Origin: Penicillus capitatus
Taxonomy: Eukaryota > Plantae > Chlorophyta
DNA length: 64,000 nucleotides
Assembly (NCBI GenBank): GCA_965649825.1
Contig: OZ287695.1
Coordinates: forward strand, 911,081 to 975,080
Reading direction: 5' to 3'
Positions 837-64,000 of the stretch are shown here, piece after piece (position 1 is the stretch's first letter; every line of letters starts with the position of its first letter). The notes below the pieces were generated by a model. It was not told the DNA's origin. It ran no database searches and saw only the letters and a list, made by a program, of their open reading frames with translations. Position numbers and translations under genes: made by a program.

Positions 837-3800
837 TCACGGACTCAGGAGTTTCTTAAGAAAAGGCCCTTCTGAGTTAGAGCAAATAGGGTCAGCGTGA
901 AAACAGATAACGTCAAAAGGCGTTTTACCATCGTTGTTCGTTATCGTCTTCGATGCTCCGGCATCCACCAGGACCTGAAAATACACAATCAAACTACATG
1001 ATGATCTCTCTGACTCGCCTTTGCTGTCTCTGATTCGCCTTCATCTGCTGCATAGTGAAGTGGAGTATCTCCATATATATCTACTGCATTGAGAGAGACA
1101 TCTTCTGCGATCAACAACTGCAACAGGGAAAATGGAAAAGGGCGTTAAGTTAGGAGTATACTTTCACGACTTCAGGATTCCCTCTAGCCACGGCAAGGTG
1201 AAGTGGTGTCATTTCATAATCGGTTTCATCGTCGGCGTTTGCTCCGTGTTCGAGAAGAACCTGGCAATCGGCAGATTTTGTCAACATGGCAACGAAGTGA
1301 ATCTACAACCGACCTCCACCATTTTAGCGCCTGCGTAACGTGCTGCAATATGCAGAGCAGTCCATCCATCGTCGTCGGCCTGTTCGATGTCCGCTCCGTT
1401 CTCGAGGAGCATCTGACAGTCGATAGATTCCGCTAGTAATGCAACGAAGTGAACACGTTACCGACCTTGACCATTTCAGCGCCTGCGTGACGTGCTGCAA
1501 AGTGCAGAGCAGTCGATCCATCGTCCGTCGCTGCGTTAACGTCTGCTTCGTGTTCGAGGAGAACCTATACGACAGCTTCTGCAAGTGTAGAAGAAGTGAA
1601 TACGTTACCGACCTTGACCATTTCAGCGCCTGCGTAACGTGCTGCAATATGCAGAGCAGTCCATTCATCGTCGTTGGCCTGTTCGATGTCCGCTCCGTTC
1701 TCGAGGAGGACCTGACAGTCGATAGATTCCGCTAGTAATGCAACGAAGTGATTGCATAACTGACCTTGACCATTTCAGCACCTGCCAAACCTGCTGCAAC
1801 ATGCAGAGCAGTCGATCCATCGTCCATCGCTGCGTTAACGTCTGCTTCGTGTTCGAGGAGAACCTATACGACAGCTTCTGCAAGTGTAGACGAAGTGATT
1901 GCATAACGGACCTTGACCATTTCAGCACCTGCCAAACCTGCTGCAATATGCAGAGCAGTCGATCCATCGTCCATCGCTGCGTTAACGTCTGCTTCGTGTT
2001 CGAGGAGAACCTATACGACAGCTTCTGCAAGTGTAGACGAAGTGATTGCATAACGGACCTTGACCATTTCAGCACCTGCCAAACCTGCTGCAATATGCAG
2101 AGCAGTCCTTCCATCGTCGTTAGCTGCGTTAACGTCTGCTTCGTGCTCGAGGAGAACCTGGCAATCGACAGATTCTGCCGTTGGGGCAACTAAGTGAATC
2201 TACAACCGACCTCCACCATTTTGGCGTCTGCGTATCGAGCTGCCAGATGCAAAGGAGTCTCTGTGTTGCTGTTCAGCTTGTCGACGGTTGCGTTATGTTC
2301 CAGAAGAACCTACAAAGCATGAGCACAGGGATTTGATAAACAGAAGCAATGCGTCTAGGCTCTGTAATCCAGAGTGGACTCGGAAGAGCGTGCTACCTCG
2401 GTGCTTTCTGTCGCACTGTAATACGCCGCCCAGTGCAGCAAAGTCAATTGCTGCCGTTTAGAGTACCATGGCATTCGAACCATGGCCTTGTAGAAAGAAT
2501 CTGGATCCAGTTCCTCCAAAAGAGCAGCTTCCAGCTTTAGGGCATTGTCATCCTTTATACAGCGAAACGCCTCCTACGGAACTGTCTGTCATTCCCAACG
2601 ATCTTCATTGTCAATGCAACCTTAATCAGCTCCTTCTGCGAAAGTCTTCTCATCTCTTCGCGCCATTCTTCACGTTCCTGTTGTTCCGACTTCTCCTCTT
2701 TCACTTTGTCGTCTACATGTTCATTTAACTCTGAAGATCTTACGTCATCTTCATCATCTTGCGAAGCTCCGTTAGTAACTTCCAATGTGTCTTGCACCTG
2801 CACTGAGCAATCAGGACAGAAAAGCAGATTTGGAGAACAGTTTACATCGTCTTCGCCAATTTCTTTTAGAATCCAGTCCCAGAACGCGCCGATACTTGTG
2901 TAAATGGAAGGTGATCCATCAACGCAATTCTTAGATCCCATGGATGTCACGCCGACAATCATGTCGAGTTCCGGATTTCCGGCAGCTACGTCTCCTTTAG
3001 GTTTGTTAGAGATCAACAGCGGACCACCAGAGTCTCCTACAACAAGAGAATCTCGGCAGAAATAGGTAATCTCATATCACCGTCCTAAACCTTCACATGT
3101 GTTTTCAGGCGAGAATCCAGCGCAAATTGAGTGACTCTTGACTGAGTTGCCCATGAGTTTCTTGCAGATGTGGTGTTCCACATGTACTAGATCATTCGTC
3201 ATCTGTAAAGAATTCGGATACTTTCCAGTCTTGTTTAGTCCCCATCCGAGTACGGTAAACATCTTCCCGGTAGGAAAATCGCCTCCCTGAGTGTCTAGTG
3301 ACGGCAGCGTGAGATTTGCCTCTTTATTCAATTTGACAACGGCGATGTCATATCCATCTTTCACGTCGCCGCTCCAAGATTCGTGAATGTGACTCTCTTC
3401 CCCGCTGAATACCTAATAACTTCCTTCTCGGTAAAGTGAATGGCCTTGAACAGATCACTTTGTCGGAGTCGATTGCGTCGAGCTCGTAAATACCGCAGCG
3501 GACAAGCGGATGTCTACCGAGACTGTTCAAAGATGGATCAACGCAATGTGCTGCAGTGACCACCCATTGTGGTCGAATGAGAAATCCGCCGCAGCGGTGG
3601 ACCTCTTCTTCTCGTGTCGCAAGACTGCAAACGTAAGGGAACCGTCCCTCAGGCGCCTCTTCGCCCTTCGTCAAGAAAAAAAGTTAGGTGCCGTCAGAGA
3701 ATCGTGCGACTTCACGATAATGTATGGAACGTGTTTCTTCGTGGAGTCTGGGTTTCCCGACTTCTCTGAACAATCACCCGTGTCGGAGTGTTAACCGACA

Positions 3801-3911
3801 GTAGTAATTTGTACTCTGAACTTTAGGACTGGGGTCGGCACAGATATGCAGCACGGATGCCAAGAGGAGCAAAGCTGCAATGGACTTTCTCGGCAACGAA
3901 AAAAGCAACAT
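837..3911 (-). CDS. Secreted S1 serine protease-ankyrin repeat fusion protein, paralogue 1 (multi-exon, 9 single-repeat exons)
   Basis: Signal peptide MLLFSLPRKSIAALLLLASVLHIC; triad motifs VVTAAHC, GYDIAVVKL, G|DSGGP; acidic linker; 47-nt phase-0 intron 2574-2620 joins ...ELIK to EAFRCIK; 99-nt ankyrin exons (e.g. 2211-2309, 1019-1117); stop TGA at 837-839. Confidence 0.85.
1019..2309 (-). repeat. Tandem array of ankyrin exon+intron units (~147-152 bp)
   Basis: Nine 99-nt exons of the form VLLEHEADVNAAxDDGxTALHxAA...AEMVK separated by 44-53 nt introns; several units near identical including the introns. Confidence 0.9.
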
Positions 3912-4289
3912 GTTTTGAGGTATAAGAAAGCGGATGTCTGTTGAAACGCCAACAGCCGTTTAAATAGATTCGGCGCCATCCATTTGTCACATCGCATTGA
4001 ACTAACCACCACGATGACTTCTGGACACCGCACAACGAGAGACGCTACCACGTGTCCAGTGCATTGCACCAAGTGTCCCCCGGTTTTATCAATCGCCACT
4101 TAAATAAAGTATTATTAAAACAGGCTCTGTGCCTTTATAGAATGAGTGAGTTCTCACGGCAGCATTCCTGAAATACGTTTACGGTCTGCTTTCTTCACAC
4201 AATGTTCGATTTCCGTCAAGGTCATTTACTTCGTAATCCCTTTGTTTCTCACTCTTCCTTCACGGGCATCGAGATGAGAATCGGACCGG

Positions 4290-4960
4290 AAGGGATGTTA
4301 GTCGAGCCTGAGGGTATTTGGATTCAAGTTCTTGATTCATGTCTTCGAGGATGAGCAGCTGTTTATTGAATTTTTTGACGTTTCGTTTCCACCGGCGGCT
4401 GTGTCCGCTCTCTTGTTCCTCCTTCTCCAGCTCTTCTCCCAGGATTTTTATTTTTCGTGCATGTTGCGCCAGGAAACGTGCTTGCTGTACGTATTCCGAT
4501 CAGCTGATGGTAAGAGTGGGACGTGCGAAGAAGGCGGAGATGAGATCCACTGGCAAAGAAGACAGTCCGATGCCGCCGCAGATGAGGAACGTCCACCATC
4601 CCACGGCCGAAAACAGGGCCACCGCGTGCGGCGGAATATCGTTCTCATTTTTCAGGTCTTTTATTTCACTACACCCCTCTTGGCATCACACTGAAGACAT
4701 CATGGAGACAGCAGGCCCATTGCGTCAGAGGCGAGGCGAGGCGCATTTGGTCTCCGGAAAAGGAGAGGGACGAGGCGTTTGAAAGGGAGAGAGACATGTC
4801 GATGTGTCCCTGGTTCCAGAAATTCTCGAAACTCATGCTGCCGAAGGCCAGCCTCGCTATTGAAAACTCCACGTATCCGGCCAGGGTCTAGGCAATGCCC
4901 AATATAAACCCGATGACAGTCATTGCTGTCAATTGGGACATTCACCTTTCTTAATTTGCA
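4290..4960 (-). pseudogene. LMBR1/LIMR-family membrane protein pseudogene fragment
   Basis: Translation GFILGIA*TLAGYVEFSIARL...KT*KMRTIF / AVALFSAVGWWTFLICGGIGLSSLPVDLISAFFARPTLTIS*SEYVQQARFLAQHARKIK...SRRWKRNVKKFNKQLLILEDMNQELESKYPQ matches my recollection of plant LIMR proteins; at least three in-frame stops and one frameshift. Confidence 0.75.
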
Positions 4961-5777
4961 CATGTCAAATCCTTCTGTGTTCACAACAAAGGATGCATGG
5001 TCGATACTAGACAAGCTATCGGCCTTATGGCGGTATACATTTTCATGTTTTGGAAAAGATGAATGAACTCCCTAAAGTATCGAACTGTCCTAGTTGCTGC
5101 TATTTACATTCGCCTTGAATCCAACTCAATCAATCACGTTCGTCAAAGTCTTGCAGATAAGCAAAAGAAAATAGAAACCATTATCACTTCGCCCGTCAAG
5201 AAAAATCTCGTGTCATATCGATATCTCTGCGGCCCATTCTGAATAATGATATCATGGCTTCATATGTCTCTCCCCTGTCACGAGCGCTCGTGTATCATGC
5301 AAAACATGTGTTCTAAAACAACCCTGGCAAATGGCGGACCTTCATATTGGGGTGATGATGCTCTATGACTCTACAGAGAAGTTTCTGCCAACGAGTCCTT
5401 ATGGCGATTCAGTGCGAGAGATCAAGGTCAACTTGTCAATGTGACTGCGAGGACATGTTCGCATCATAGACTCTCACGTACAGACTTCGAGAGAGAAACT
5501 CGAATGTGCCACAAGAAGCTGCTATCGCACTGTAGTTGCGGCGACGCTGGGTCGACAATACACTGAATTTGTCACTAATCAGCAATCGATAACATAGCCA
5601 TGATCCTAGTGACTTGTCTTTTCGTGCACACAGGAAATTAATCAATCAATTGTTCCCCCGCTCTAACGGGTCAACAGAAGTGTTCGTGAGAACACGTAGG
5701 TGTTGTAAAATCAACTAAGAATTAGACTGTTGTTCAGATGATATGTTTGAGAGTCGAGGACTCCATTGGACGACTCC

Positions 5778-8700
5778 TCATGGACGCAGGAGTCTCTCAA
5801 GGGCGAGTCGTGTCGATTTAGAACATTCAACGGAAGTACGCAGACAGATAACGCCAAAAGGCGTTTCTTTATCTTCGTTAGTTGCAGTCTTCGATGCCCC
5901 GGCATCCACTAGAACCTGAATGAAATGCACCGTCAAGCACTGATGTGCTACGTCTGACTTGCCTGTGCCATTTTTGGCTCTCCGTCACGTGCGGTTATGT
6001 GAAGTGGCGTTTCTCCATTGTCATCGACCGCATCGATATCGGCCCCTTCTTCAAGCAACAGCTACAGCAACAACAAACGTGGACAAGAAAACAAGAGCAA
6101 ATGAGCATGCACCTGCAAAATTTTGGGGTTACTGCTGTAGTTGGCGGCATCGTGTAGAGGAGTTTCTCCATTGTAAGCGACCGCATTGACCTCGGCCCCT
6201 TCTTTGAGTAACAGCTACATCCAACAACAACGTGGACAAAGAAACAGAAGCGAATCGCCAGGCACCTTCACAACTTCGTAGTTACTGCTGTAGGAGGCGG
6301 CATTGTGAAGAGGAGTATCTCCATCGTAATCGACCGCATTGACGTCAGCCCCTTCTTTAAGTAACAGCTACATCCAGCAACGTCCACAGGACAACAGAAG
6401 TAAAACGGCAAGCACCTTCACGTATTCGAGGTTAGCTGCATAGTCGACGGCAAAGTGAAGCGGAGTGTTTCCATCCTTGTCGACCGCAGTGATGTCGGCC
6501 CCTTTTCTAAGTAACAGCTACACCCAACGACAGACATGGACAAAAAACAGTAGCAAATCGCCAGGTACCTTCACAATGTCGGGATCATCATGGAAGGAGT
6601 CGAAGAAGAATACCAGCCTATCACCGTACCCGACGGCAAGGTGAAGTGGAGTTTCTCCATCGTCATTCACCTCATTGATGTCGATCCCTTCTTCAAGCAA
6701 TAGCTACAACCAACGACGGACGTAGACAAGAGAAGAGAAGCGAAGCGGTATGCACCTGCAGGATCTTGGCGTGATTACTGTGTTGGGCGGCAGAGTGAAG
6801 TGGCGTCCATCCGTCCTCGTCGACGACATCAACCTTCGCTCCGTGCTCGAGGAGTATCTGAAAAACGAAAGCTTCTGTCGATAAGACGACGAAGTGACCG
6901 TGGAGCCGACACCTTGACCACTTCGACTTCTGCGAAACTTGCCGCCCGATGCAAAACAGTAAACCCATCGTCCTTGGCCTGGTTGACATCCGCTCCGTGT
7001 TCAAGGAGAACCTTAACAGTCGAGTGTCTCTGGCAGAGGCGACGAAGTTAATGCGTAACTAACCTTGACCACTTCGGCGTCGTGGTTAGACACAGCTTCA
7101 TACAGAACAGACCATCCGCTGTCCGTGACCCTTTTAACCTTCGCTCCATTCTTGATAAGGAGCTGACAGTCGACAATATCTGTTGATCAGGTAACGAAAT
7201 GTATGCGGCACCTACCTCGACCAACTCGGCGTCTGCGTTGTTCGCTGCTTCAAACAGAGGAGTATCGTCTCCGTCGTCGACCTTATTGACGTCTGCTCCG
7301 TGATTAATGAGTACCTATCTCTCTAAGACACTTGCCGAGGCGCGCGGGAGCACATCAGATCTCGCCTGCGCAGTTTTCGTGTTTCCGTAATAAGCAGCAT
7401 CGTGTAGGGGTGTGTTTTGATAGTCATCAACGGCGTTCACTTTGGCTTCGTGATCCAGAAGAATCTGTGAACAGACATCTGAGCAGACGCGTGAGATGAC
7501 ATTGAAAGTTCACCTTTGCCATACTCGCGCGTCCGTTCACTGCTGCCACATGCAGCGGAGTATCGCCGTACTTGCTGGGTTTGTCCACTCTTGCACCATA
7601 TTCCAGAAGCACCTTCAAATAGAAAAAACATGGCTATAAATGGACAGAACCGAACAGTCTAAACTCTGTACTCCAAAGAACTTAGAGCATACCCACCTTC
7701 ATGCATTCTGAAGCATTATAATACGCCGACCAGTGCAACAAAGCAAACCGCTTCTGTTCCACAGAGGTCGAGAGAGCAGAGCGTCTTGTGGCGTATGTGT
7801 ATATATATACGGGCCATGGAACATAGGACTCGTAGGAGGAATCTGGATTCAGCTCCTCCAAAAGTACGGCTTCCAACTTCGGGGCATTGTTATCTTTAAT
7901 GGATTCAATAGCTTCCTACAGAACCATCAGTTCATTCACCGCGATCTCCATCGTCAGTGCAACCTCGATCATCTCTTTCCGTGAGAGTTTCGTCATCCTC
8001 GCGCGTTCCTTTTCAATCTTCCGCTTTTCCGACTGTTCCTTTTTCGTTTCATTGTCTGGCGATCGCTCTATTGCAGGAGGTTTTGCGTCCTCGTCACCAT
8101 CTGCTGATGGTTGCTCCACCGATTGCTGTCGATTTTTCTCCTGTTCTAGGCGATCAGACACGAGGAACGGATGTCTAAAACAGTTTACCTCTGGATCTTC
8201 GTCGATCTTCTCGAGAATCCAGCCCCAGAATGCACCGATGCTTGTATAGATGGTCGGCGATGTGTCGGTGCAGTCTTCGGACCCAAATGATGTTACACCA
8301 ACAAGCAGGTCGAATCTTGGACTCCCGGTGGCTATGCTGCCTCCAAATCTGTTGGGAATCAACAGTGGACCGCCAGAATCGCCTTCAGGAGAAGAGGCTT
8401 GGCAGAGAGCAATGCTAACGGGTAAGTGTTTAACCTTCGCATGTGTTCTCATTCTCACCCGAGAATCCAGCACAGATCGAGTGTTTCTTGACGGCGTCTT
8501 GCAGAAATCCTTCGCAGTGGCGGTGATTTACATAAATAAGGCTGTCTGCTATCTGTAGAGAGTTTGGATGATTTCCAGTCTCGTCCTGTCCCCAGCCCAG
8601 AGCGGTAAACAACTTACCCTCTCGGAATTCTCCTCCCTGAATGTCTATCGATGGCAGTGTGAGGTTCGCATTCCTGTCTAATTTGACCAAAGCGATGTCG

Positions 8701-9268
8701 TATCCATCCTTAACATCTCCGGCCCAGGATTCATGCCAGTAACTTGCCTCGCCGCTGAACACCTAGCAAGTATTCATTTCTACGCAGAACGCGTAGAAAC
8801 GCGAATGTGTTACTCTGCTGTGGTCACTATCATTAAGCTTGTGAATACCGCAGCGGACGAGCGGATTTCTTCCCAGGCTGTTAGAAGATGAGGGGTCGAC
8901 GCAGTGCGCTGCTGTGACCACCCACTGCTGTCGAATGAGCGTTCCGCCGCAGTGATGAGAACCCGTTTCTCGAGTGGATAGACTGCAAATGTAGGGGAAC
9001 CGTCCTTCAGGTGCCTCGTTTCCCTGTAAGAAGAACGAACGTCAAAATCTGAGTTCGTGCATCACGGACGATCTCACGATGACATAGGGAATGAGAAACT
9101 GCCCGGACGCCGATTTTTCTGCGACCTCTAACATACACGCGCGCCGGAAATGTCACCCGGAGAGGCACTACCTTTCTTTTTTTGGCATGCTGCCACGCAG
9201 AAGTGCAAGAAAAGCAGCAGAGAAAAATGAAAGCCGCGACGGCAAAGTGAAACAGAGAAACGTTTCAT
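5778..9268 (-). CDS. Secreted S1 serine protease-ankyrin repeat fusion protein, paralogue 2 (~11 repeat exons)
   Basis: Signal peptide MKRFSVSLCRRGFHFSLLLFLHFCVAAC; VVTAAHC, GYDIALVKL, GDSGGP; 48-nt junction intron 7916-7963; 33-34 codon ankyrin exons; stop TGA at 5778-5780. Confidence 0.85.
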
Positions 9269-10056
9269 GTCAACGGCAAGAATGTGTTTGTGGTAGAACG
9301 TGCGCTTAAGTAACGCGAACGGTTCAGTCATTAAATGCTTTCCCTTACCCGTCGCTGCGTGCTGGCCATTGAGGAAAGACGGATGGAACCGTTCGTACGT
9401 CTCCTTCGTAGATTTGGATTCCTAGACACCGAGATGACGCATGGGAGAGATCTAATGCTTCCCGCAATGCGTATGCATACACACTTCTCAACTGTGCTTA
9501 TCACTTTAAATACTGTTTATACATACAAGCAGTGGTTGATGGTAGATATGACATCGAACTGAGAAGAACGCAATCACGGAAGGAACACCGTCTCATGCTA
9601 CAAAACAGAGCTAAGCAGTAGATTCCGCCTAGGTTTAGGGTAGTAACGTTTCTATTTTGTTCACGGCATCGAGAAAAGCAATACCGAGCGTTGGGCCTGC
9701 CAGCGAGTTCTCCCGCAGCGTCGATAGAAACGAAGGCCTCTTCTGCTGGGATGCACATTAAAGATATGTTTGTCATCTGAACACTGTGTATGTCCTTAGG
9801 TAACCTGCCTATTTCACTCTTTGCGGATTCGTCTGTTTGGAGAAACAACGGTTCGAAGCTCGGAGTGGCGGTAATGGTTGAGAACTCTTTCAGTGGCGCA
9901 TTTTGACATTTGCGGTTTGTTTGAGTAATCGTCGATGCTGCACGACGATCAAAGGGATACTGAGGACGGTTTTTCCTATTTTATCAACTTCCATTCGTAT
10001 AAGATACACCTTTATGCTTTCCGCTCGTGCTGCATCTGGATTTCGTGTGTGAAACG

Positions 10057-12298
10057 ATGACCGTTCCCAGAATAATAGCTTTTCTAGCATTGGCACTTTT
10101 GTTGTCGACACACAGTAGCTTCGGTCAAATCATCGACTCCATTCCAAAACTCAGACGCTTCATAAGGTCACAGGAAGCCATTGTGAAAGACATCGCCGAG
10201 AACGCAACGAAATGGCATGCGGACAGAATCCGTCTCGTCCGCGACTGCGAATGCTCCAGACACGCCTGTTCTAATGACTTCCTAAACGTCGAGTGCGTCC
10301 ACCACCTCGGGGAACTGGACATTTGTAAAACCGACGGACGACGGGTGGACTACAACAACTCCATCTTCCGCACGCCTCGGGGCACGAATCCGAAGAGGCT
10401 CACCGACAGCCTCAAGGAGAGCATCTGCGTCTACAAGCAGTTAGAAGATGTCGTCAAGGAATACGGTCGCGATGAGATTGGATGGATTTACATCGGTAAG
10501 AGTAATTCTCAGTCCTTCGACGTTATCCAGTTCTACAGGAACACGAGATGGACACTTTCGACGGTATCCAGGCACGGCGGATTCGCGTCATGACGAGAAT
10601 GGAGATGAGTTGTGGAATTTATGCAGACTGTACGATCCTCGCCTTCGTCCATGGTATATCGGAGCCAGTACTGGACCGAAGGACCTCGTTCTGGTGGTGG
10701 ACAAGTCCGGCTCCATGCTGGACTACATAGATTTTGCGCAAACGAAGACCAAGTGGGATTTGATTTCTCGAGCTGTGTCCGAAATGATCGACACGTTTAC
10801 CTTTGCCGACTTCATCTCTCTAGTGACGTTTTCGGACTCGGCTGGGACAGCTTTGCATGGAACGGGTCTTGTCAGAGCCACCGAAGAAAATCGTCAGAGA
10901 CTGAAAGAAGCACTTCGAAATGAGACTGCCGTGGGGCAAACCAATTTTACAGCAGCATTTGAAGCAGCCTTCCCTTTGCTATGGGAGGGCTGCGACACCG
11001 AGCCGCCGCAATGTTCGAACTGCGAGAAGATCATTCTTTTTCTGACGGACGGCAGAGACACATCTGGAGAGAATCGAGCAAGCATCAAGCCGTCCAAGAT
11101 GGCCGCCGTCATTGAACGCCTTCAAACAGAACTTGCCAACAAAACAGGCAAACGTGCAACCATCTTCACCTATTCGATGTCCGACGATGCCGACGATGGC
11201 ATCCCCAGACAGATCGCCTGTGCGAACAATGGAGCCTGGGCCTTCATCGGGTTCCACACAAAGACACTGGACGCCTTGAACTCATACTACCTGTATGAGG
11301 CGGCCAAGCGCCGTACAGAATCGCCGTTCTGGATCGAGCCCTACGAGGATGCGAGCGGACTGGGACTCGTCACCACAGTGGCCATGCCTTTCTATGCCCG
11401 CGGAACGAACGATGTGCCTGATGTGTTCCTGGGCGTCGTGGGACACGACATCATTCTGAGCGAACTGGATTTCGAAGAAGTGACCAGAGATCAAGTGATC
11501 AGTGCTATTATACCCCGTTCAAAGGACTGTCATCTCGCAGACAACACTCCCTGCGAGTTGCAGGTCTACAGGAATGCGCACGATAGGAGATCGCGCTGTG
11601 CTGATCCCCATCACGACATATCCAAGCACTCTCCGTCTGCTAAGTCAAAGGAGCCGTACGTCCTGTGTCACGTGCATAAAGGTATGTACTACAAGAGATC
11701 GGTGGAAGAGGCGACCTGGAGAGAGGCCGTTTCCAAGTGCGAGGACATCGGAGGAAGCCTTGTGAGTGTCAAAGATGAAGAGGAGTTGGCTTTTCTGGCA
11801 AATCTGGCATCGATTGACGGATCTTGGATTGGCGCAGAGAAAACGCCAATGGCAAGCTTTGGCTGGCTGGACGACTCTTTACCGACTCTGTCACGGGACT
11901 CCGAGTTTTGGGGTATCCAGGAACCTCTGGCTGTACATGGAACCGAAAACTGTGTCGCCATCGACACGAGAGGCGTCATCGCCAACCTGAAAGCCATGCC
12001 ATGCAACAACCTCGCGACATACATCTGCAAGTTTGACACTGACGATACGTGTCCTGCCGGCATCGCCAGCCCAGGAGTAAAGGGATACTTCAAGGTTCCC
12101 CCTCTGGACAAGTGCGTCGACGAAATCGAAGCTCTCGATGAGACGAAGCCTGTCGAAGACGTCGAGGATCTGTCGACGGATGATGTCATGTGCCCCTTGG
12201 GCAGAAACAGAACGAACGCGGAACTTCAATGCTGCGGCGCCGACGACGATCTCTGCAGGACTATCTCCAAGAGAAGGTCTTTCAAGAAGCAATGTTAG
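10057..12298 (+). CDS. alpha2delta-like (Cache + VWA) secreted/membrane protein with C-type lectin domain, paralogue 1; C-terminus uncertain
   Basis: Signal peptide MTVPRIIAFLALALLLSTHSSFG; YDPRLRPWY; VWA with MIDAS DKSGS...TNF...FLTDG; Cache motif PYEDASGLGLVTTVAMP; CTLD C..IGGSLVSV...WIG...ENCVAI...YIC; one intron near 10496-10538. Confidence 0.8.
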
Positions 12299-13931
12299 TT
12301 TTGTCAACAGGAACGTCGATGGGAGTTGCGTAAGAGATCTGGCTGGATCTGTCTCTGCTGCAGTCACTCAAGACCGTCAGATTTTCGCTCTGTTCTACAT
12401 CATACTCTCAGAAAACAGAACGCTGTCTTCAATTTCTTGCTTGACCATTTCCAGGATAGCTTGTAAAATTCACACTTCAGTATTTGCTGCATTCATATCC
12501 AAAACATCATCATCGCTATAGGAAAACACGCTATTGTTAAACTTCTGCTAAAATGTAAATCGTTCAAGTACTTTATTTCTTTAGGTCATGCCCTTCTGTC
12601 GTATTTTACCGCGGAGAAAGCATCACGTATCTGAACCATGCCCTTGGTATTGTGCTGTTAAGGATTCCTCGGCCACTTCGTCGTACAGTCACGGAATTTG
12701 AGCCTACTTAAAGGTCCGCACAAGCGAAACGAACGCAGAGTGTGTCAAACGTGCATCATCACACCTTTGGAGTCGTGCAGTTATGCTTCGTATTAGCGCT
12801 ATCGAACAGAATCGTCATCGTTTGGTCTAATTGAGTGCATTGCGCTCGATCGATACAATCCATCAGCCGAGCGCTGCAGAATTAGGAAAGAGGGCCGAAG
12901 TTGTTGGCCGTCTACTGACGTCGTTCTGTGTCCATACCTGCTGACAGCGTTAGGAATGTACACGTCACATGAAAACGTCGTGCATGTTCGTTCTCTCCGT
13001 TCACCGAGTCTTTAAATCGTCGGATCCGACGAATGGACTCCTTCTGTAAGAAGATCTATCTGCAGGTTTACGGACAAAGAAATTAAACCAAGAGAAAACG
13101 GAAATAAACGCAGCATGCAATTCATGTCTAAAAGAGAAGAGTCAAGTCAAAATCCCATAAAAAGGCTGAGGAGAGCTCTACATCGTTCAGTTTCTCTGCG
13201 TATTCGCTTCATGGATGAAACAAATGACCAGATTTGAATCTGGTCTGTTTCTGTAGAAGATATCGAGATAGGACGAAGTTTCTTCATTCATTTGAAAGAA
13301 CGTTTGTCTTTGTTCTTGTGTCGAGAATCGACAGATGCTTGTCACGCACTACCAAGAATTCTGATGCAATACAGCGTCATCGACTCTTCGTCGTCACGAT
13401 CGAATCCGTGACAGACGATACCTGTATGAAGATCGACGGACGCTTCCTCTTTTCGCGACAGTCCAGAACAACGTCATTAGGAAAGCAAACTAATTGAATG
13501 GAGATAAGCTCGCTTTAGAAAGCACAAACGGTCGTTTCTTGAGAACGGAAGGTACACAAGGGCCGTTTTTTGATGTTTTACGTTCTTTTCATTCGACACA
13601 TGAACCTAACGGCTTCTATTCTGCGGCCTTCAGAACTATCCTTGACTTACAGACCGGGAAAACAAACGTCGTCAACTTGTGGAGCACGACTATTTCCAAA
13701 GACAACAGCAGAGCCAAGAACACACGTTGTCGCTACCCACACCCACACATCTGCCCAACGAAATAAACACGATTAATTGTTCACGAGGAAGCTCTGGACG
13801 CAAGTTTCAATGACTGTCATGAAAACCACAAGGGAGGTTACTCTGACGCTCCCCTAATCCCAATCCGTCAGGAGCACATAACCGAAGAACGGTTGAGGAT
13901 AGCCTCGCAATACGCAAGAGTTTTTTAGAAC

Positions 13932-16847
13932 ATGATACGTTTCACACTTTCGCGTCGACATCTCGGTCACTCACTTCTCTTACTACTTCTATTGCACTGC
14001 TCCACATCTACATGTCACTCAACAAACGGTAACGCGCCTTTGCTGAGACGTTGAACACGGTTCGGTTGCGACAGAGGCAACAACGAAGTCCGAGGCGAAA
14101 CAAACAAAACCACTCTACCTAAATGTGAACGCAATGACTCGCAGACAACGCTTGGTTGAGTTCGGATGGCTGACAGGCGGAAGAAGCTCCGGCCAGTCGG
14201 TTTCCATACACCTGTAGTCTATCTTCCAGAACATTAGGGATTCACGGTTGCGGTGGCGTACTGATTCGACCGCAATGGGTCGCGACGGCGGCGCACTGCG
14301 TTGACCCTAGTCTAACGGAATCTCTTGGTCGAAACCCCGTCGTGCATTGTGGTATTCACAAACTCGACTCTGAGAAAGGCGAAGTGAGGCAACCCTGTCT
14401 GATGACATCCCCTTTTGTAAAACAAGCGACGGTTGGCAGTTGTTGAGTGCTGAGGCGACCTATCTGCACAAGTTTTGGACAGGGAATCATAAAGACGGTT
14501 ATGATTTTGCTCTGCTCAAGCTAAAGGACAAAACGAAAATCCCATTGCCGTCTGTCGACATTCAGGGAGGCCATTTCAAGAACGGCAGTACGTTTACTGC
14601 ACTCGGTTGGGGAAAGAAGGAGGATGGACTCTTGCCGAATGCACTGCAAGTGGCTGAAATGGTCTATGTCGATCCAGAGGCCTGTAAGGAAGTCTACATC
14701 AGTCAAGTCACGAATCACACCATCTGCGCCGGATTCGATCAGAATGCCTGTGAGGGTTCGTTCCTGCATTCTCTTCTGTATCGCGAGTAAGCGCTGCGGT
14801 TAGGTGATTCCGGTGGACCATTGATCGTTCCCAACGCTCCTGGCCGGAAAGTCTTTGCCGGAGACCCCACCATTGACCAGGTCATTGGTATCACTTCAGC
14901 AGGACCCGACGACTGCGCCGATGGATACCCAACACTCTATACCAGTATTGGATCGGTCTGGGACTGGGTGCTCGAGACGATTGGCGAATCTTCGTCGGTA
15001 AGAGAATGGCTACACACGTCTATGGTCTTAGACACCTCCGTGCTGTACTAGCCATCTTCGTGCCCCGTATCCTGTCCGGATCCGTCCGATCTCGAAGAGG
15101 TCTGCCGCAACTACTGTGATGGAGAGAAGGGAGATGAAGAAACGATCGAAACGGAGCGCAAACGTTTAAGGAACCTGACAGAGAAGGAACTGCTCTATGT
15201 CGTTTCCTCTTCGAAATACGAGAGGAGAGTTGATGATGTGACATGTGCAGGAAGCTTTCATGTCAACAGTGGATGACAATGCACTGACGTTGGAAGCTGC
15301 TCTCGAAAAGGGACTGCATCCCGATGCAAACTATGGCGATGGTTATTCTTCGGATTATCCATTGGTGGCACAATCGACGTTGCTTCACTGTTCTGCTGCC
15401 TACAATGCATCAACGTGTGCCAAGGTCACATACCTATCTGCCACTCTTGCATTGCTGACGGCGGATGTGTTGTCACTCCATTCTGTCTCGCCAATAGATT
15501 CTGGTAAACAGCGATGCTGACGTTAACAGTGTCAACGCAGCAAACTTGACGCCTCTGCATATTGCCGCCATGACTGGATCCGCGTCCGTTGCAAAGGTGA
15601 GACCAGAGTCCCGACCCGATCGGCATCTCTTCTCGTATTCTCGATGCACGATAACGACATAACGGATCTAGATCCTTCTGGATGCTGAGGCTGACACAGA
15701 TTTGGCAGATGACATGGGGGCCACGGCATTGCACATCGCAGCGAGGAAAGGGCATACCACCATCGCCAAGGTGCGAAATTCAATCGGTCGGCGCTGCCAG
15801 TCTCAACGTCCAATTCAGATGCTGATGTCGAAAGGCGCTGACCTCGAAGCACTGGACGATTCGGATCAAACACCACTGCACGAAGCGGTCAACAATGGCC
15901 ACGTCGGAATGGTCAAGGTCGATGCAGCATTTCTCCTTCTCCATCTAAAAGGGACGATCAGGTTCTCTTGGATTTCGGCGCAGAGACAGATGCTGCGGAG
16001 AAGGGTGGGAATACTCCCCTTCATATCGCGGCACACTATGGACATACATCCATCGTCAAGGTAATCCCTCGGAAGAGTCGTACACTTGGCGACATTCAAA
16101 GCCGAAATCTGTGAACAGCTTCTCCTTCGCGACGGAGCGGATGTCAATGCAATCGATGATGAGGCGTGGACTGCCCTGCACACGGCATCGCGTTTTGGAC
16201 ACGTTGAGATCGCGAAGGCACGGCATCGGATATTTCTCTCTAAATCAACGTGGACTGTTGGCAGATTCTGCTGGATCACGATGCAGATGTCGATGCCGTC
16301 AAGGCCAACTCATGGAATGCACTCCACTTGGCTTCGCGCTATGGACACGCCAAGATCGTGAAGGTTCTTCTCTGGATCCATCTCCGCACCTAGTAGCAGA
16401 GTGCATCGACAGGACCTCCTCCAACACGGAGCAGATGTGAATGCCGCAAAGAACGATGGATGGACGGCGATGCACTTGGCGATTCTTGGCAAACATATCG
16501 AAGTCGTGAAAGTACATCCAACGTTTCGTCAATGTCGATCGCATCTCTGCATTTGTCGCAGATTCTTATCGACGAAGGAGCAGATTTTGACGAGGTCACA
16601 GAATCTGGGCATACTCCTCTTCATACCGCAGCCGGTTTCGGACTGTTGAACATCGTTAAGGTGCATCTAGGTCGCCTCTTATCGTCTCCACACCGCATCA
16701 TCTATCCAGGTCCTGCTGGATGCCGGAGCTTCGAAGACGGTGACCGACGTCGATGGATTGACGCCTCTGGATGTCGTGTGCGCCGAACACCATATTATTT
16801 GCTCCGAAGAGACACGGACTTCCATCAGGAAACTTCTGTCTCCATAA
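13932..16847 (+). CDS. Secreted S1 serine protease-ankyrin repeat fusion protein, paralogue 3 (8 divergent repeat exons)
   Basis: Signal peptide MIRFTLSRRHLGHSLLLLLLLHC; WVATAAHC, GYDFALLKL, G|DSGGP; junction intron 15199-15250; eight 99-nt ankyrin exons; stop TAA at 16845-16847. Confidence 0.85.
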
Positions 16848-30234: not shown

Positions 30235-30364
30235 ATGGAAGATAGTAACAGTGGCGGCGGATGGAAGATAGTAACAGTGGCGGCGGATGGAAGATAGTAA
30301 CAGTGGCGGCGGATGGAAGATAGTAACAGTGGCGGCGGATGGAAGATAGTGACAGTGGCGGCGG
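30235..30364. repeat. Minisatellite, 5 x 26 bp (atggaagatagtaacagtggcggcgg)
   Basis: Direct reading; four perfect copies and one copy with a single substitution. Confidence 0.95.
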
Positions 30365-51194: not shown

Positions 51195-51346
51195 ACACAG
51201 ACAGCGCAGTCTTTTCTTGAACGGCCTGCGGAACAGAACTCGCGACAGAATAGAGACCCCGCGCGTCGCTTACGTGCAGAGACACATGTTGACAACAAAA
51301 CTGAACGCATCGCGTCATGCTTTAGACGAATATCAAAACCATGACG

Positions 51347-52784: not shown

Positions 52785-55575
52785 ATGAAACGGTTTTGTG
52801 TTTCGCGTTACCGTTTCCGCTTTCGGTTTTCGTTACTGCTTCTCGTGCACCTCCACCTAGCAAAATGTCAAGAAAAAGAAGGTACTGTCACCCAGGTTGG
52901 CATTTCCGATGCGGATATGTCCTTTAACGGTTCAGGAGCATCGGCCTCTGAGCCACGAGTCACTTCCTATATCATCGTGAGTTTGTATAGCGTGCATTAG
53001 TTCAAGTTTCACGCCCGTTTTTCTCATAGGGAGAAGAAGCACCTGAGGAACGGTTCCCTTACGTTTGCAGTCTCTCAAGACGCGAAGATGGAATCCACCG
53101 CTGCGGTGGAACACTCATTCGACAACAGTGGATCGTCACAGCGGCACACTGCGTCGACCCCGCCTATCCAAATAGCATCGGCAGAAATCCCCTTATCCGT
53201 TGCGGTATTCACAGGCTCGACTCAAGTGATCCCGGCAAGGTAACCTATTCGCGGCCATTCACTTTCCTACCAAGATGGAAGCTGCTAGCTGTTCAGCGGA
53301 GAGGAGAGTCACTGGCCCGAGTCTTGGACCGGCGACGTGAAGGACGGATACGACATCGCAATCGTCAAACTAAACAGAGAAGCGAACCTCAAATTGCCGT
53401 CGATAGACACTCAGGCAGGCGAATTCCGCCCAGGCAAAATATTCACTGCACTCGGTTGGGGACGGAACAAGACTGGGCACTTTCCAACCTCTCTACACAT
53501 GGCAGACAGCCTTGTGTATGTGAGTAATGACCAGTGCAAAGAATCTCTGAAAGACGCCGTCAAGACGCATTCGATTTGTGCTGGATTCTCGGAGGAGAAT
53601 GAGAACACATGCAAAGGTTCAATGATTGCTTGCGGGCATAACTTTCTTCTAAGACTCTTCTGCTGAAGGTGATTCTGGCGGTCCACTGTTGATTCCTAAC
53701 AGTTTTGGAGTCTACACAGCAGCTGGAAACCCAGAATTCGACCTGCTTGTCGGCGTGACATCCATGGGATCCAAGAATTGCTCCGATGGATCTCCTTCCA
53801 TCTATACAAGTATCGGTGCATTCTGGGATTGGATTCTAAAAGAAATTGGCAAAGAAGATGTAAATTCTTCACCAAATCTCTTGTTCTGTCCTGATCGCTT
53901 TGTGCAGGTGCCAGACCCATCAGAAGAACCTTCACCAACTGTTATGCCATTTTCAGAGGCAGATGAAGTCGCAGATGATGAACTGAAAGAGGAGTTGGAA
54001 CAGCAAGAACTTGAAGAATGGCGCAAAGAGATAAGAGGACTCTCGCAAGAACAGTTGATCAAGGTTGCATTAATAATGAAGATCGTTGCGAATCGACAGA
54101 CGGCTTTGTAGGAAGCGTATCGCTGCATAAAGGATGACGATGCCCTTAGGCTAGAAGCTGCATTCCTGGAAGGACTGGATCCAGATTCTTTCTACAAGAC
54201 CTTTCTTCAGATGCCATGGGGGAGTGAATGGGACCGCCTTGCGTTATTGCACTGGTCGGCAGTTTACAATGCGTCAGAAAGCACCGAGGTAGCACTCTCA
54301 TTCGAGTCCACTCTGGACTACAGAGTCTATATGATTCCCTTCTGTCTACTAAATCCTTGTACTCATACTTTGAAGGTTCTTCTAGAATATAACGCAACCG
54401 TTGACAAGCTCAACAGCATCAAAGAGACTCCTTTGCATCTGGCGGCTGGAAAAGGACACGCCAAGGTAGCAAAGGTAAATCTACAAAACAAGCTTCATCG
54501 TCTGCTTCGACGTCCATACTCAGATTCTCCTCGACCACGGTGCCGACGTTAAACTGGAACTGGTTGATAGATGGACTGCTCTGCATCTGGCAGCCCGTTA
54601 CGCAGACGCCGAAATGGTGGAGGTTTGTATCCCGTGCACTTCGTTGCCTCATCGACAGACAGCCTCGGTTGACTGCCAGATCCTCCTCGAGCACGGAGCC
54701 GACGTTAACCTGAAATTGGCTAACGGATGGACTGCTCTGCATCAGGCAGCCCGTTACTCAGACGCCGAAATGGTGGAGGTTTGTATCCCGTGCACTTCGT
54801 TGCCTCATCGACAGACAGCTTCTGTCGACTGCCAGGTCCTTCTCGAGCACGGAGCCGACGTTAAACTGGAATTGGTTAATGGATGGACTGCTCTGCATCA
54901 GGCAGCCCGTTACGCAGACGCCGAAATGGTGGAGGTTTGTATCCCGTGCACTTCGTTGCCTCATCGACAGACAGCTTCTGTCGACTGCCAGGTCCTCCTC
55001 GAGCACGGAGCCGACGTTAACCTGAAATTGGTTGATGGATGGACTGCTCTGCATCTGGCAGCCCGTTACTCAGACGCTGAAATGGTGGAGGTTTGTATCC
55101 CGTGCACTTTGTTGCCTGCCTCGTTGACAGACAGCTTCTGTCGACTGCCAGGTCCTTCTCGAGCACGGAGCGGACGTCGACGACGTAACCGCTTACGAAC
55201 AGACACCACTTCACCTTGCTGCGTCCGGAGGGAACCTTGAAGTCGTGAAGGTATACTTCTAATCTAACGCCGTTCTCCATTTTTCCTGTTGCAGTTGTTG
55301 ATCGCAGAAAATGTCTTTCTCAACGCAACAGATGTGGATGGAGATACTCCGCTTCACTATGCAGCAGAGGATGGCGAGTCAGAGACGGCAAAGGCGAGTC
55401 AGAGACAGCATTTTACAGTTTCATGATGCATTTCCAGGTTCTGGTGGATGCCGGGGCCTCGAAGACGATAACCAGCGATAGCGGAGACACGCCTTTTGAC
55501 GTTATTTGCACTGAAACTGACACTAAATGTTCTGCAGCGAAACGGTCCTCTCTTAAGAGACTCTTGCGACCATAA
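52785..55575 (+). CDS. Secreted S1 serine protease-ankyrin repeat fusion protein, paralogue 4 (7 repeat exons)
   Basis: Signal peptide [28 protein letters not shown]; [17 protein letters not shown]|DSGGP; junction intron 54064-54111; stop TAA at 55573-55575. Confidence 0.88.
54530..55155 (+). repeat. Four tandem ~156-bp ankyrin exon+intron units
   Basis: 99-nt exon + 57-nt intron (gtttgtatcccgtgcact...gactgccag) repeated; visible as the 52-aa period of ORF 54614-55240. Confidence 0.92.
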
Positions 55576-63089: not shown

Positions 63090-64000
63090 TCATGGTCGCA
63101 AGAGTCTCCTAAGAGAAGGTCCTTCTGAGTTAGCGCAATCAGGGTCAGCATAAAGACAGATAACGTCAAATGGCGTTTCTCTGCTGTTGTTGGTTACCGT
63201 CTTTGAAGCTCCGGCATTCACCAGAACCTATATGAAATGCACCGTGAACATTAACATGCTACCTCTGACTCGCCTTTGTTGTCTTTGACCGACCGTACAT
63301 CGCGGCTTTGTGAAGTGGAGTTTGTCCAGATTCATCGACCGCATCGACATCGGCCCCTGCGTCTAGCAGCAGCTACAACCAACAACTACGTGGACAAGAA
63401 CAGAAGGAGATTGGAGTGCACCTGTACAACTTCGGGGCTTCCATTGAAGCCGGCGGCTTCATGAAGTGGAGTTTCTCCATATTTATCGACCGCATCGACA
63501 TCGGCCTCTGCGTCTAGCAGCAGCTACAACCAGCGACAACGTGGACATAAGAACTAAGGCAAATCGACATGCACCTGTACAACTTCGGGGTTTTCATTGA
63601 AGCCGGCGGCTCTATGAAGTGGAGTTTGTCCAGATTCATCGACCGCATCGACATCGGCCCCTGCGTCTAGCAGCAGCTACAACCAGCAACAACGTGAACA
63701 AGAACAGAAGGAGATTGGAGTGCACCTGTACAACTTCGGGGCTTCCATTGAAGCCGGCGGCTCTATGAAGTGGAGTTTGTCCAGATTCATCGACCGCATC
63801 GACATCGGCCCCTGCGTCTAGCAGCAGCTACAACCAGCAACAACGTGAACAAGAACAGAAGGAGATTGGAGTGCACCTGTACAACTTCGGGGCTTCCATT
63901 GAAGCCGGCGGCTCTATGAAGTGGAGTTTGTCCAGATTCATCGACCGCATCGACATCGGCCCCTGCGTCTAGCAGCAGCTACAACCAACAACTACGTGAA
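63090..64000 (-). CDS. 3' part of an ankyrin-repeat gene of the same family (paralogue 5); 5' end outside the window
   Basis: 102-nt exons LLLDAGADVDAVDESGQTPLHRAAGFNGSPEVVQ in ~151-bp units; same GC-AG last intron and C-terminal cap (VICLYADPDC...LLRP*) as the other paralogues; protease domain not visible here. Confidence 0.8.

What the first reader, a model, noticed from the sequence alone, without database searches (positions are those of the whole stretch)
837..16847. Family of secreted serine protease-ankyrin array fusions: a candidate variable-recognition plus protease effector system
Seen: three genes here plus 52785-55575 share one architecture: signal peptide, S1 protease with intact His/Asp/Ser motifs, acidic linker, N-cap exon, 7-11 ankyrin exons and a two-Cys C-cap. 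A short phase-0 intron joins protease and ankyrin parts in each, and no promoter space or consistent ATG exists for a separate ankyrin gene. Established: ankyrin repeats are mostly cytosolic or nuclear binding scaffolds whose turn and first-helix residues set specificity. Inference: a secreted protease guided by a rapidly diversifying DARPin-like array could target varied extracellular ligands (defence, wound response or microbiome control). I do not recall a functional description of this architecture, but I cannot check novelty.
Basis: partly seen in the sequence, partly recalled or inferred. Interest (0 to 1): 0.85.

Follow-up and report, generated by a model that had tools for sequence, protein, structure and literature searches.

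The report
Algal secreted protease-ankyrin fusion gene family
Four complete genes and one partial gene in this green-alga-like window each encode a chymotrypsin-type protease with a secretion signal, tethered to a long ankyrin-repeat array; the design is real, also expanded in the giant-celled alga Bryopsis, and undescribed in the papers I could search.

Summary
Splicing short GT-AG or GC-AG introns (44-87 nt) gives four complete paralogues: g1 3911-837 (-), g2 9268-5778 (-), g3 13932-16847 (+) and g4 52785-55575 (+). A fifth, partial copy lies at 64000-63090 (-). Each has a hydrophobic N-terminus, a propeptide, an S1 protease with an intact His/Asp/Ser triad, an acidic linker, a phase-0 junction intron, 7-11 one-repeat ankyrin exons and an invariant two-Cys C-cap.

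The fusion is not a modelling artefact. Relatives carry the whole architecture as single uninterrupted ORFs on gene-sized, transcript-like contigs. At least 12 Bryopsis sp. KO-2023 "hypothetical proteins" share it. Both halves are under purifying selection.

My best reading is a secretory-pathway zymogen, activated within the family, whose tethered ankyrin solenoid selects substrates or partners. The S1-pocket residue 189 co-varies with the residue before the predicted activation cleavage, which supports intra-family activation.

"Rapid diversification" is only partly supported. Arrays grow by duplication of exon-intron units and vary on the canonical binding face, but dN/dS stays below 1. Secretion, substrate and biological role are untested. 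I rate it a new variant of a known kind, of moderate interest.

The parts
837..3911 (-). g1: complete protease-ankyrin gene, 16 exons, 765 aa
   Evidence: Curated model. Pfam Trypsin E 8e-41 plus Ank_2 E 9e-111.
3716..3911 (-). g1 exons 1-2 (97 + 50 nt) and the intron between them: signal-peptide-like N-terminus and propeptide, ending ...VPY before IIGEEAP
   Evidence: Best 10-residue window (IAALLLLASV) has Kyte-Doolittle hydropathy (KD) 2.85.
2621..3665 (-). g1 exons 3-5: S1 protease domain (His motif at 3557, Ser motif at 3037) and acidic linker
2574..2620 (-). g1 junction intron, 47 nt, GT-AG, phase 0
837..2573 (-). g1 ankyrin part: N-cap exon 2573-2397, nine 99-nt repeat exons 2309-1019, two-Cys C-cap exon 974-837
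   Evidence: Tandem Repeats Finder (TRF) period 147/299 at 1289-2259.
5778..9268 (-). g2: complete gene, 18 exons, 865 aa. Junction intron 7916-7963; N-cap 7915-7697; eleven repeat exons 7612-5963; C-cap 5915-5778
   Evidence: TRF period 153 at 5999-6576.
13932..16847 (+). g3: complete gene, 16 exons, 704 aa. Junction intron 15199-15250; N-cap 15251-15424; eight repeat exons 15498-16660; C-cap 16710-16847. One extra intron in the linker at 14998-15051
   Evidence: Pfam Trypsin E 1e-40 plus Ank E 1e-72.
52785..55575 (+). g4: complete gene, 14 exons, 692 aa. Junction intron 54064-54111; N-cap 54112-54288; seven repeat exons 54376-55393; C-cap 55438-55575
   Evidence: TRF period 156, 4.1 copies, 92% matches at 54527-55177.
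63090..64000 (-). g5: 3' part of a fifth family member, cut by the window end. Five ankyrin exons (63978-63274) and C-cap exon 63227-63090
   Evidence: TRF period 151 at 63302-64000.

Best explanation
These are paralogous nuclear genes of an unidentified chlorophyte green alga, plausibly a siphonous (giant-celled) one. They encode mosaic S1A (chymotrypsin-fold) serine-protease zymogens that enter the secretory pathway.

Shown:
- One gene encodes, in order, a signal-like N-terminus, a short basic propeptide, a disulfide-bearing catalytically intact protease, a 50-80-residue acidic linker, and a capped ankyrin solenoid. The solenoid has an N-cap, 7-11 internal repeats and a C-cap with two invariant cysteines.
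- In the structure model of a relative, the two domains are confident rigid bodies on a low-confidence linker, with no predicted docking between them.
- Arrays change length by duplication of exon-plus-intron units.

Inferred:
- The zymogen is activated by cleavage just before (I/V/L)(I/N)(G/A)(E/N)EAP, after a conserved Tyr. A family member probably makes this cut, because the S1-pocket residue 189 co-varies with that P1 residue across the family.
- The very acidic ankyrin array acts as a tethered exosite. It either picks the protein to be cut or holds the enzyme on a partner or surface. It would thus play the role that LysM, PAN or FG-GAP modules occupy at the same C-terminal position in sister proteases.

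The final destination (seawater or cell wall versus vacuole) and the substrates are unknown.
For: - Gene models, with exon sizes and intron phases conserved across four paralogues.
- Pfam Trypsin plus Ank.
- The triad, six protease cysteines and two C-cap cysteines are invariant in 23 sequences.
- Full-length uninterrupted fusion ORFs lie on gene-sized contigs: JGI 3300008031 (L002, L005) and Logan SRR6256312 and SRR6255880 (L004, L006).
- At least 12 Bryopsis sp. KO-2023 proteins share the architecture, and two such genes are adjacent there.
- Both halves are under purifying selection.
- N-terminal hydrophobic stretches are present and internal transmembrane-like segments absent.
- Residue 189 co-varies with the activation-site P1: N with Tyr, D with Arg/Lys, G/A/S/T with Phe/Leu.
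- AlphaFold2 model of relative P0001: protease and ankyrin parts confident, linker pLDDT below 40, pTM 0.46.
- The two halves match elastase/chymotrypsin and DARPins separately. No solved structure covers both.
- Sister proteases carry LysM, PAN or FG-GAP at the same position.
- Variability peaks at the binding-face positions.
Against: - There are no transcript data for this genome itself. The closest database relatives of the window genes (P0004, P0006) are only genomic ORFs.
- No signal-peptide predictor was available. The hydrophobic cores of g3 and g4 are short and interrupted by His.
- g3 has LNA instead of I-I-G at the predicted new N-terminus, so its activation may differ.
- The residue-189/P1 co-variation has exceptions (P0011, P0013) and rests on 22 sequences from a few lineages.
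- Variation on the ankyrin binding face is typical of any ankyrin family, so it does not show ligand diversity.
- AlphaFold2 could not be run on the window proteins themselves. The tool refuses spliced sequences.
Confidence: 0.5

Rival explanations
1. The protease is a bulk extracellular digestive enzyme. It would be part of the S1 peptidase expansion already reported for Bryopsidales. On this view the ankyrin array gives only solubility, spacing or non-specific adhesion, for example of a very acidic tail to mineral or cell-wall surfaces, and not specific target choice.
For: - The Ostreobium genome paper reports 189 S1 peptidase genes, about 40% of them with signal peptides. It interprets them as external protein degradation.
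- The ankyrin parts are strongly acidic, with net charge -28 to -46.
- dN/dS is below 1 everywhere.
Against: - The caps, the two-Cys motif and the repeat framework are conserved across distant lineages.
- Changes after duplication concentrate on the binding face.
- Sister proteases carry dedicated ligand-binding modules (LysM, PAN) at the same position.
Confidence: 0.17
2. The ankyrin array regulates the protease rather than targeting it. It could act as an intramolecular inhibitor or chaperone, or as an oligomerisation scaffold. Alternatively it could be removed by cleavage in the linker, so that it works like a large C-terminal propeptide or sorting domain (for example to the vacuole).
For: - The long, exposed, low-confidence linker would be easy to cleave.
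- The C-terminal helix and the ...LL(S/R)P end are conserved.
- Retaining the junction intron would give a protease-only product, which suggests the protease can work alone.
Against: - AlphaFold2 predicts no docking of the array on the protease (pTM 0.46).
- Repeat number varies from 7 to 11 and surface residues vary, which is unexpected for a fixed intramolecular partner.
Confidence: 0.15
3. The fusion is an artefact of my gene models. The protease and the ankyrin array would then be separate, adjacent genes.
For: - There are no transcripts from this genome.
- If the junction intron is read through, the ORF stops within 0-10 codons after it.
Against: - The same 47-52-nt phase-0 intron lies at the same column in four diverged paralogues.
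- There is no room for a terminator and promoter, and there is no conserved ATG in the N-cap exon.
- Relatives have uninterrupted fusion ORFs on transcript-like contigs.
- The Bryopsis gene models, which that genome paper says combined RNA-seq-based, homology-based and ab initio prediction, have the same architecture.
Confidence: 0.03

Closest known systems
Uncharacterised Trypsin+Ank 'hypothetical proteins' of Bryopsis sp. KO-2023 (for example BSKO_04809, 04685, 04812) and of unidentified organisms in JGI sample 3300008031 and Logan runs
   Same: Same order of parts: signal-like N-terminus, S1 protease with the (G)RFPY motif, linker, ankyrin array, and a C-cap with two invariant cysteines and a terminal helix. 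They are clustered and multi-copy, with many introns.
   Different: - Identity is only 28-40%.
- Residue 189 and the activation-site P1 differ: G/A/S/T with Phe/Leu in Bryopsis, D with Arg/Lys in the unidentified group, N with Tyr here.
- Bryopsis introns are longer, and its last exon holds several repeats.
- None has a described function.
Mosaic S1 zymogens of animal clotting, complement and CLIP cascades (plasma kallikrein and factor XI with apple/PAN domains)
   Same: - They are secreted, disulfide-bonded chymotrypsin-fold zymogens joined to non-catalytic recognition modules and activated by cleavage at the new N-terminus.
- The best sequence matches among solved structures are plasma kallikrein, factor XI and elastase.
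- A sister algal protease even carries PAN domains.
   Different: - The animal modules are N-terminal. Here the module is C-terminal.
- I know of no ankyrin repeats in those cascades (own knowledge).
- There is no evidence of a cascade here beyond the residue-189/P1 co-variation.
HtrA/DegP proteases (S1C protease plus C-terminal PDZ)
   Same: A PA-clan serine protease with a C-terminal protein-binding domain that governs substrate access (own knowledge).
   Different: - It belongs to a different subfamily (S1C).
- It has no zymogen activation.
- It works as an oligomeric cage.
- It uses PDZ, not a repeat solenoid.
Designed ankyrin repeat proteins (DARPins) and natural ankyrin binding domains
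   Same: - The ankyrin half of the model superposes on DARPins with TM-score 0.88-0.89, normalised by the target.
- The most variable positions here are the positions randomised in DARPin libraries, plus their neighbours.
   Different: - Natural ankyrin domains are almost all cytosolic or nuclear (own knowledge).
- These ones follow a signal peptide and carry an invariant Cys pair in the C-cap.
Ankyrin arrays used as substrate receptors for degradative enzymes (ASB ankyrin-SOCS box ubiquitin-ligase adaptors; bacterial effectors that pair ankyrin repeats with a protease, such as Legionella LegA7)
   Same: They follow the same working logic: a repeat array picks the target and an attached or recruited enzyme destroys or modifies it. 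This rests on my own knowledge; the LegA7 paper (10.1101/2024.03.17.585421) appeared and I did not read it.
   Different: - They act in the cytosol.
- Their chemistry differs (ubiquitin ligase, cysteine protease).
- They have no evolutionary relationship to this family.

Membership tests
Peptidase S1A (chymotrypsin family, clan PA) | Match to the family profile above the curated threshold | tested here: met
   PF00089 scores 140 bits against a cut-off of 20.6, covering profile positions 4-220. There are 442 solved S1 structures at E <= 1e-10.
Peptidase S1A (chymotrypsin family, clan PA) | Catalytic His57, Asp102 and Ser195 in their conserved motifs | tested here: met
   TAAHC, DGYD(I/F)A and GDSGGP are present in all four genes. 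H, D and S are invariant in 23 sequences.
Peptidase S1A (chymotrypsin family, clan PA) | Conserved disulfides (42-58, 168-182, 191-220) | tested here: met
   All six cysteines are invariant columns. Their pairing is inferred from homology, not observed.
Peptidase S1A (chymotrypsin family, clan PA) | Zymogen activation that creates an Ile/Val N-terminus to pair with Asp194 | tested here: inconclusive
   Asp194 is present. g1, g2 and g4 have Y|(I/V)IG(E/N)EAP, one residue shorter than IVGG. g3 has Y|LNAEEAP. Cleavage itself is not testable here.
Peptidase S1A (chymotrypsin family, clan PA) | Proteolytic activity | not testable with these tools
   This needs recombinant enzyme.
Ankyrin-repeat proteins | Tandem 33-residue repeats matching the Ank profiles, with the TPLH motif and helix-turn-helix fold | tested here: met
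   Ank_2 E 9e-111 and Ank E 5e-76. There are 30 repeats of exactly 33 aa. In the AlphaFold2 model of a relative, the ankyrin half has pLDDT above 95 and paired helices. It matches DARPins with TM-score 0.88.
Classically secreted proteins | Cleavable N-terminal signal peptide and no other membrane anchor | tested here: inconclusive
   There is a basic n-region followed by a hydrophobic stretch (best 10-residue window has Kyte-Doolittle hydropathy, KD, of 2.2-2.9). No internal 19-residue window exceeds KD 1.6. No dedicated predictor was available and no experiment was possible. Support is indirect: invariant cysteines in the protease and C-cap, and an NxS/T sequon in the N-cap of g2, g3 and g4.
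Diversifying recognition-receptor families (arrays under positive selection) | dN/dS above 1, or a significant excess of replacement changes at ligand-contact positions | tested here: not met
   Regional dN/dS is 0.2-0.76. Recent duplicates give 0.4-1.0 on very few changes. Replacements are enriched at contact positions, 9/24 against 17/109, p = 0.019. Exon divergence versus intron divergence is not significant, p = 0.10.
Bryopsidales Trypsin+Ank clade | Shared architecture, including the two-Cys C-cap and terminal helix | tested here: met
   Invariant G-A...C...C...L columns are shared by the window proteins, 12 Bryopsis proteins and the other relatives aligned.
Bryopsidales Trypsin+Ank clade | The source organism belongs to Bryopsidales | tested here: inconclusive
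   - The best named hits of the fusion are all Bryopsis.
- The legumain neighbour is only 37-38% identical to Ostreobium, Bryopsis and land plants.
- The best named hit of Spb1 is Asterochloris at 47%.
- The organism is chlorophyte-like. Its order is not established.

The most novel reading that the evidence does not exclude
The family could be a clotting-like or surveillance-like zymogen system of giant coenocytic algae.

The proteases would be stored in the secretory or vacuolar compartment. On wounding, compartments mix and cytoplasm is extruded into seawater. The proteases would then meet proteins that their ankyrin arrays recognise, either the alga's own cytoplasmic proteins or proteins of invading microbes. 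They would activate one another through the matched pocket and activation site, and drive wound plugging, protoplast re-enclosure or defence.

Ankyrin repeats would then be serving as extracellular recognition modules of a proteolytic cascade, evolved independently of animal clotting and complement.
Probability: 0.1. Interest if true: 0.85.

Novelty: new variant of a known kind. Interest (0 to 1): 0.5.

Why it matters
Ankyrin repeats are among the commonest protein-binding modules, but they work almost entirely inside the cytosol and nucleus. Here a whole family routes them through the secretory pathway on the tail of a chymotrypsin-type zymogen. This would widen the known uses of the fold. 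It would also give a natural counterpart to engineered protease-binder fusions.

The family is multi-copy and clustered, both here and in Bryopsis. Bryopsis belongs to a group of single-celled giants known for sealing wounds and rebuilding cells from extruded cytoplasm, and reported to have a large, unexplained expansion of S1 peptidases.

The matched S1-pocket and activation-site residues point to self-activation or mutual activation, which can be tested directly. The paper title seen (PMC12961179) indicates that RNAi now works in Bryopsis, so the function can be approached experimentally.

Tried and rejected
- Naive gene modelling failed. A longest-ORF dynamic programme and a low intron penalty read through in-frame introns or invented tiny exons. 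I replaced them with codon-usage and splice-site scoring plus curation against the paralogues.
I did not work around this and modelled the closest database relative, P0001, instead.
- The look-up of encoding contigs with the 616-aa VWA-lectin ORF found no record.
- A metagenome-contig scan with the g4 junction peptide found no relative, so I have no transcript from a close relative.
- Attempts to name the organism through legumain and Spb1 gave only distant named hits.
- The test for faster change in exons than in introns between duplicated units was not significant.
- Region-level dN/dS gave no sign of positive selection.
- I rejected a Dasycladales origin. TAA ends g4 at exactly the position where the g1 ORF ends with TGA, so the standard code applies.
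- I rejected a membrane-spanning topology, with the ankyrin part in the cytosol. There is no hydrophobic segment between the domains.
- The animal Trypsin+Ank hit P0108 has the opposite domain order, so I take it as independent.

Full report
**What the window is**

The window is eukaryotic. GC content is about 0.50 throughout. Genes are broken by very short introns. A motif scan finds TAAHC and GDSGGP once at each of four loci, each followed on the same strand by 7-11 TPLH/TALH ankyrin motifs. It also finds a fifth ankyrin run at 63321-63927 on the minus strand.

**Gene models**

A simple longest-ORF splicing programme failed. I then scored codons against the window's own long ORFs, scored donor and acceptor sites, favoured introns of 44-56 nt, and curated the result against the paralogues. 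The models are:

| Gene | Coordinates | Strand | Exons | Length |
|---|---|---|---|---|
| g1 | 3911-837 | - | 16 | 765 aa |
| g2 | 9268-5778 | - | 18 | 865 aa |
| g3 | 13932-16847 | + | 16 | 704 aa |
| g4 | 52785-55575 | + | 14 | 692 aa |

The structure is conserved in detail:
- Exon 1 is 97 nt, ending in phase 1, in all four genes. Exon 2 is 50 nt (41 nt in g4).
- The junction intron between the protease-linker exon and the N-cap exon is 47, 48, 52 and 48 nt. It is GT-AG, phase 0, and lies at the same alignment column.
- After the N-cap exon, each ankyrin repeat is one exon of 99 nt (a few are 102 or 135 nt), bounded by phase-0 introns.
- The last exon is 138 nt in all four.
- The donor before that last exon is GC(G/A)AGT in g1, g2 and g4, and apparently in g5.

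A fifth gene, g5, is cut by the window end. Five ankyrin exons and a C-cap exon are visible at 63978-63090 on the minus strand.

**What the proteins are**

- Pfam gives Trypsin (PF00089, E about 1e-40, nearly full profile) and the ankyrin families (E 1e-70 to 1e-111).
- The four proteins align end to end.
- In an alignment with 20 database relatives, these columns are invariant:
  - the catalytic His, Asp and Ser
  - the six cysteines of the three canonical S1 disulfides
  - a C-cap pattern G-A...C...C...L
- The protease domain is closest in sequence to plasma kallikrein, factor XI, elastase and chymotrypsin among solved structures (E about 1e-24).
- All four models start with a basic stretch followed by a hydrophobic run. 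No other segment is hydrophobic enough to span a membrane.
- The linker is acidic (pI 4.1-5.3). The ankyrin part is strongly acidic, with net charge -28 to -46.

**Is the fusion real?**

This genome has no transcript data. Its own proteins are in the searched collection only as prokaryote-style ORF calls on a 74,663-nt contig (P0121). Four kinds of evidence still support one gene per locus.

1. The junction intron is conserved in position and phase in four paralogues whose synonymous divergence is 0.5 to saturated. Both sides are under purifying selection. dN/dS is 0.15-0.22 for the protease and 0.2-0.76 for the N-cap, first repeat, last repeats and C-cap.
2. A 47-52-nt gap leaves no room for a terminator and a promoter. 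The N-cap exon also has no conserved ATG.
3. Relatives with the same architecture occur as single uninterrupted ORFs on gene-sized contigs with short flanks:
   - P0003, 757 aa, on a 2587-nt contig of JGI sample 3300008031
   - P0001, 578 aa, on a 1952-nt contig of the same sample
   - P0002, 562 aa, on a 2044-nt contig of Logan run SRR6256312
   - P0025, 670 aa, on a 2713-nt contig of Logan run SRR6255880

. The genomic copies here and in Bryopsis are full of introns, so these contigs look like spliced transcripts. I could not confirm the library types.
4. At least 12 annotated proteins of Bryopsis sp. KO-2023 have Trypsin plus Ank. That genome paper says its nuclear gene models combined RNA-seq-based, homology-based and ab initio prediction. 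At one Bryopsis locus two such genes sit side by side, each with many introns.

A second contig of unknown origin carries two more family members in tandem (ENA ERZ25074695, 613 kb, GC 0.50). One of them is 76% identical in DNA to the g4 protease.

**How it probably works**

*Activation.* The residue at the base of the S1 pocket (189, six residues before the catalytic Ser) co-varies with the residue just before the predicted new N-terminus:

| Group | Residue 189 | Predicted activation site |
|---|---|---|
| Window proteins | Asn | ...Y\|(I/V/L)(I/N)(G/A)(E/N)EAP |
| Relatives P0001, P0002, P0022, P0026, P0029, P0034 | Asp | R or K before I-x-G-G |
| Bryopsis proteins | G, A, S or T | mostly F or L before (I/V)-x-G-G |

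Two Bryopsis proteins are exceptions. P0003 also has Asp189, but its site (...VR|GEKEAP) lacks the I-x-G-G motif. This pattern is what one expects if family members activate themselves or each other. It is an inference from 22 sequences, not a demonstration.

*Domain arrangement.* The AlphaFold2 model of the closest relative I was allowed to submit (P0001) has these features:
- a confident protease (residues 41-280)
- a very confident ankyrin solenoid (334-578, pLDDT about 95)
- a linker with pLDDT below 40
- pTM of 0.46, so no docking between the domains is predicted

Foldseek matches the two halves separately, to elastase/chymotrypsin and to DARPins. No solved structure covers both.

*Role of the array.* Close relatives of this protease carry other binding modules at the same C-terminal position:
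- two LysM domains (P0023)
- PAN domains (P0027)
- FG-GAP repeats (P0031, Bryopsis)

These are typical extracellular ligand-binding modules. That supports reading the ankyrin array as a tethered recognition or anchoring module outside the cytosol.

**Diversification**

- Across the 30 canonical repeats, variability is highest at the positions that form the binding face. These are the positions randomised in DARPin libraries, plus neighbouring helix-1 positions. Mean entropy is 2.7 bits there against 1.5 elsewhere. This is true of ankyrin families in general.
- Arrays clearly grow by tandem duplication of exon-plus-intron units. Tandem Repeats Finder reports periods of 147/299, 153, 156 and 151 nt at 77-92% identity. 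Some duplicated units have identical introns.
- Among recent duplicates, amino-acid changes are enriched at the six a-priori binding positions: 9 of 24 against 17 of 109, one-sided p = 0.019.
- Exons do not diverge significantly faster than introns (p = 0.10), and dN/dS never exceeds 1.
- So array length and surface do vary, but rapid adaptive diversification is not shown.

**Organism and context**

- The best named relatives of the fusion are all from Bryopsis.
- The neighbouring legumain is only 37-38% identical to Ostreobium, Bryopsis and land-plant enzymes.
- The best named hit for Spb1 is a trebouxiophyte at 47%.
- The standard code applies: TAA ends g4 at exactly the position where the g1 ORF ends with TGA.
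- I conclude that the source is a chlorophyte green alga, plausibly siphonous. Its species and order are unknown.

The rest of the window is rich in secretory-pathway genes: two VWA + C-type-lectin genes, two legumains and a CD36-family gene.

**Novelty**

- The Bryopsis genome paper does not mention ankyrin or protease.
- The Ostreobium genome paper reports a large S1 peptidase expansion (189 genes, about 40% with signal peptides). It reads this as external protein degradation and does not mention ankyrin.
- A survey of trypsin domain architectures did not sample green algae and does not list this one.
- Other searches found nothing relevant.
- The searchable library is incomplete, so this is absence of evidence.
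- One animal protein has ankyrin repeats N-terminal to a trypsin domain. That is the opposite order and presumably arose independently.

**Verdict**

The architecture is real, conserved, multi-copy and uncharacterised. It rests on inference for three points: secretion, targeting and diversification.

It is a new variant of a known kind, namely mosaic S1 zymogens. Interest is moderate. It would be high if the wound-response or surveillance reading were borne out.

Noticed in passing
window 10027-12298 (+) and 17730-19902 (+): Two paralogous genes with a signal-like N-terminus, a VWA domain, a weak Cache/PDC-like match and a C-type lectin domain. C-type lectin domains are mainly an animal feature. 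The Bryopsis genome paper reports finding no animal-type lectins.
   Followed up: partly
window 27346-29132 (+) and 31989-33736 (+): Two legumain / vacuolar-processing-enzyme genes (Peptidase_C13 plus legumain prodomain), 44% identical to each other. A EukProt relative has about ten with near-consecutive gene numbers (g2311-g2333), probably a tandem cluster. An 85%-identical copy lies on another ENA contig of 279 kb.
   Followed up: partly
window 2574-2620, 7916-7963, 54064-54111; L001 about 10800: If the junction intron is retained, the ORF ends after a conserved tail VAL(T/I)M(K/E)I... In g2 and g4 the TAG of the acceptor is itself the in-frame stop. The junction intron is also more conserved between paralogues (71-83% identity) than introns 1-4 (about 51-73%). 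A protease-only isoform by intron retention is therefore possible.
   Followed up: partly
window 975-1018, 5916-5962, 55394-55437, about 63228-63273; also 7315-7365 and 16218-16264: GC-AG introns. The donor GC(G/A)AGT before the C-cap exon is conserved in g1, g2 and g4 and apparently in g5. Two further GC donors occur inside the arrays of g2 and g3.
   Followed up: partly
window 1912-2157 and 54680-54991: Some duplicated ankyrin units have identical introns (0/48 and 0/57 differences) while their exons differ at 6-7 of 99 bases. Pooled over all recent duplicates the excess in exons is not significant (p = 0.10).
   Followed up: yes
L001 9400-17500 (ENA ERZ25074695 ctg340412, 613 kb): Two more protease-ankyrin genes lie in tandem on a contig with the same GC content. 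One has only about four ankyrin repeats. It is either the same organism or a close relative.
   Followed up: partly
window 30235-30364: A 26-nt unit (ATGGAAGATAGTAACAGTGGCGGCGG) is repeated five times at 99% identity.
   Followed up: no
window 58987-59652 (+): A reverse-transcriptase fragment (RVT_1, partial), probably a decayed retroelement.
   Followed up: no
window 24030-25056 (+), 34623-36135 (-), 47874-49640 (+), 50214-52047 (-): Other genes in the window: a CD36-family fragment, the Spb1 rRNA methyltransferase, a long Ser/Gly/Phe-rich low-complexity ORF with no Pfam match, and two rhodanese-domain genes.
   Followed up: partly
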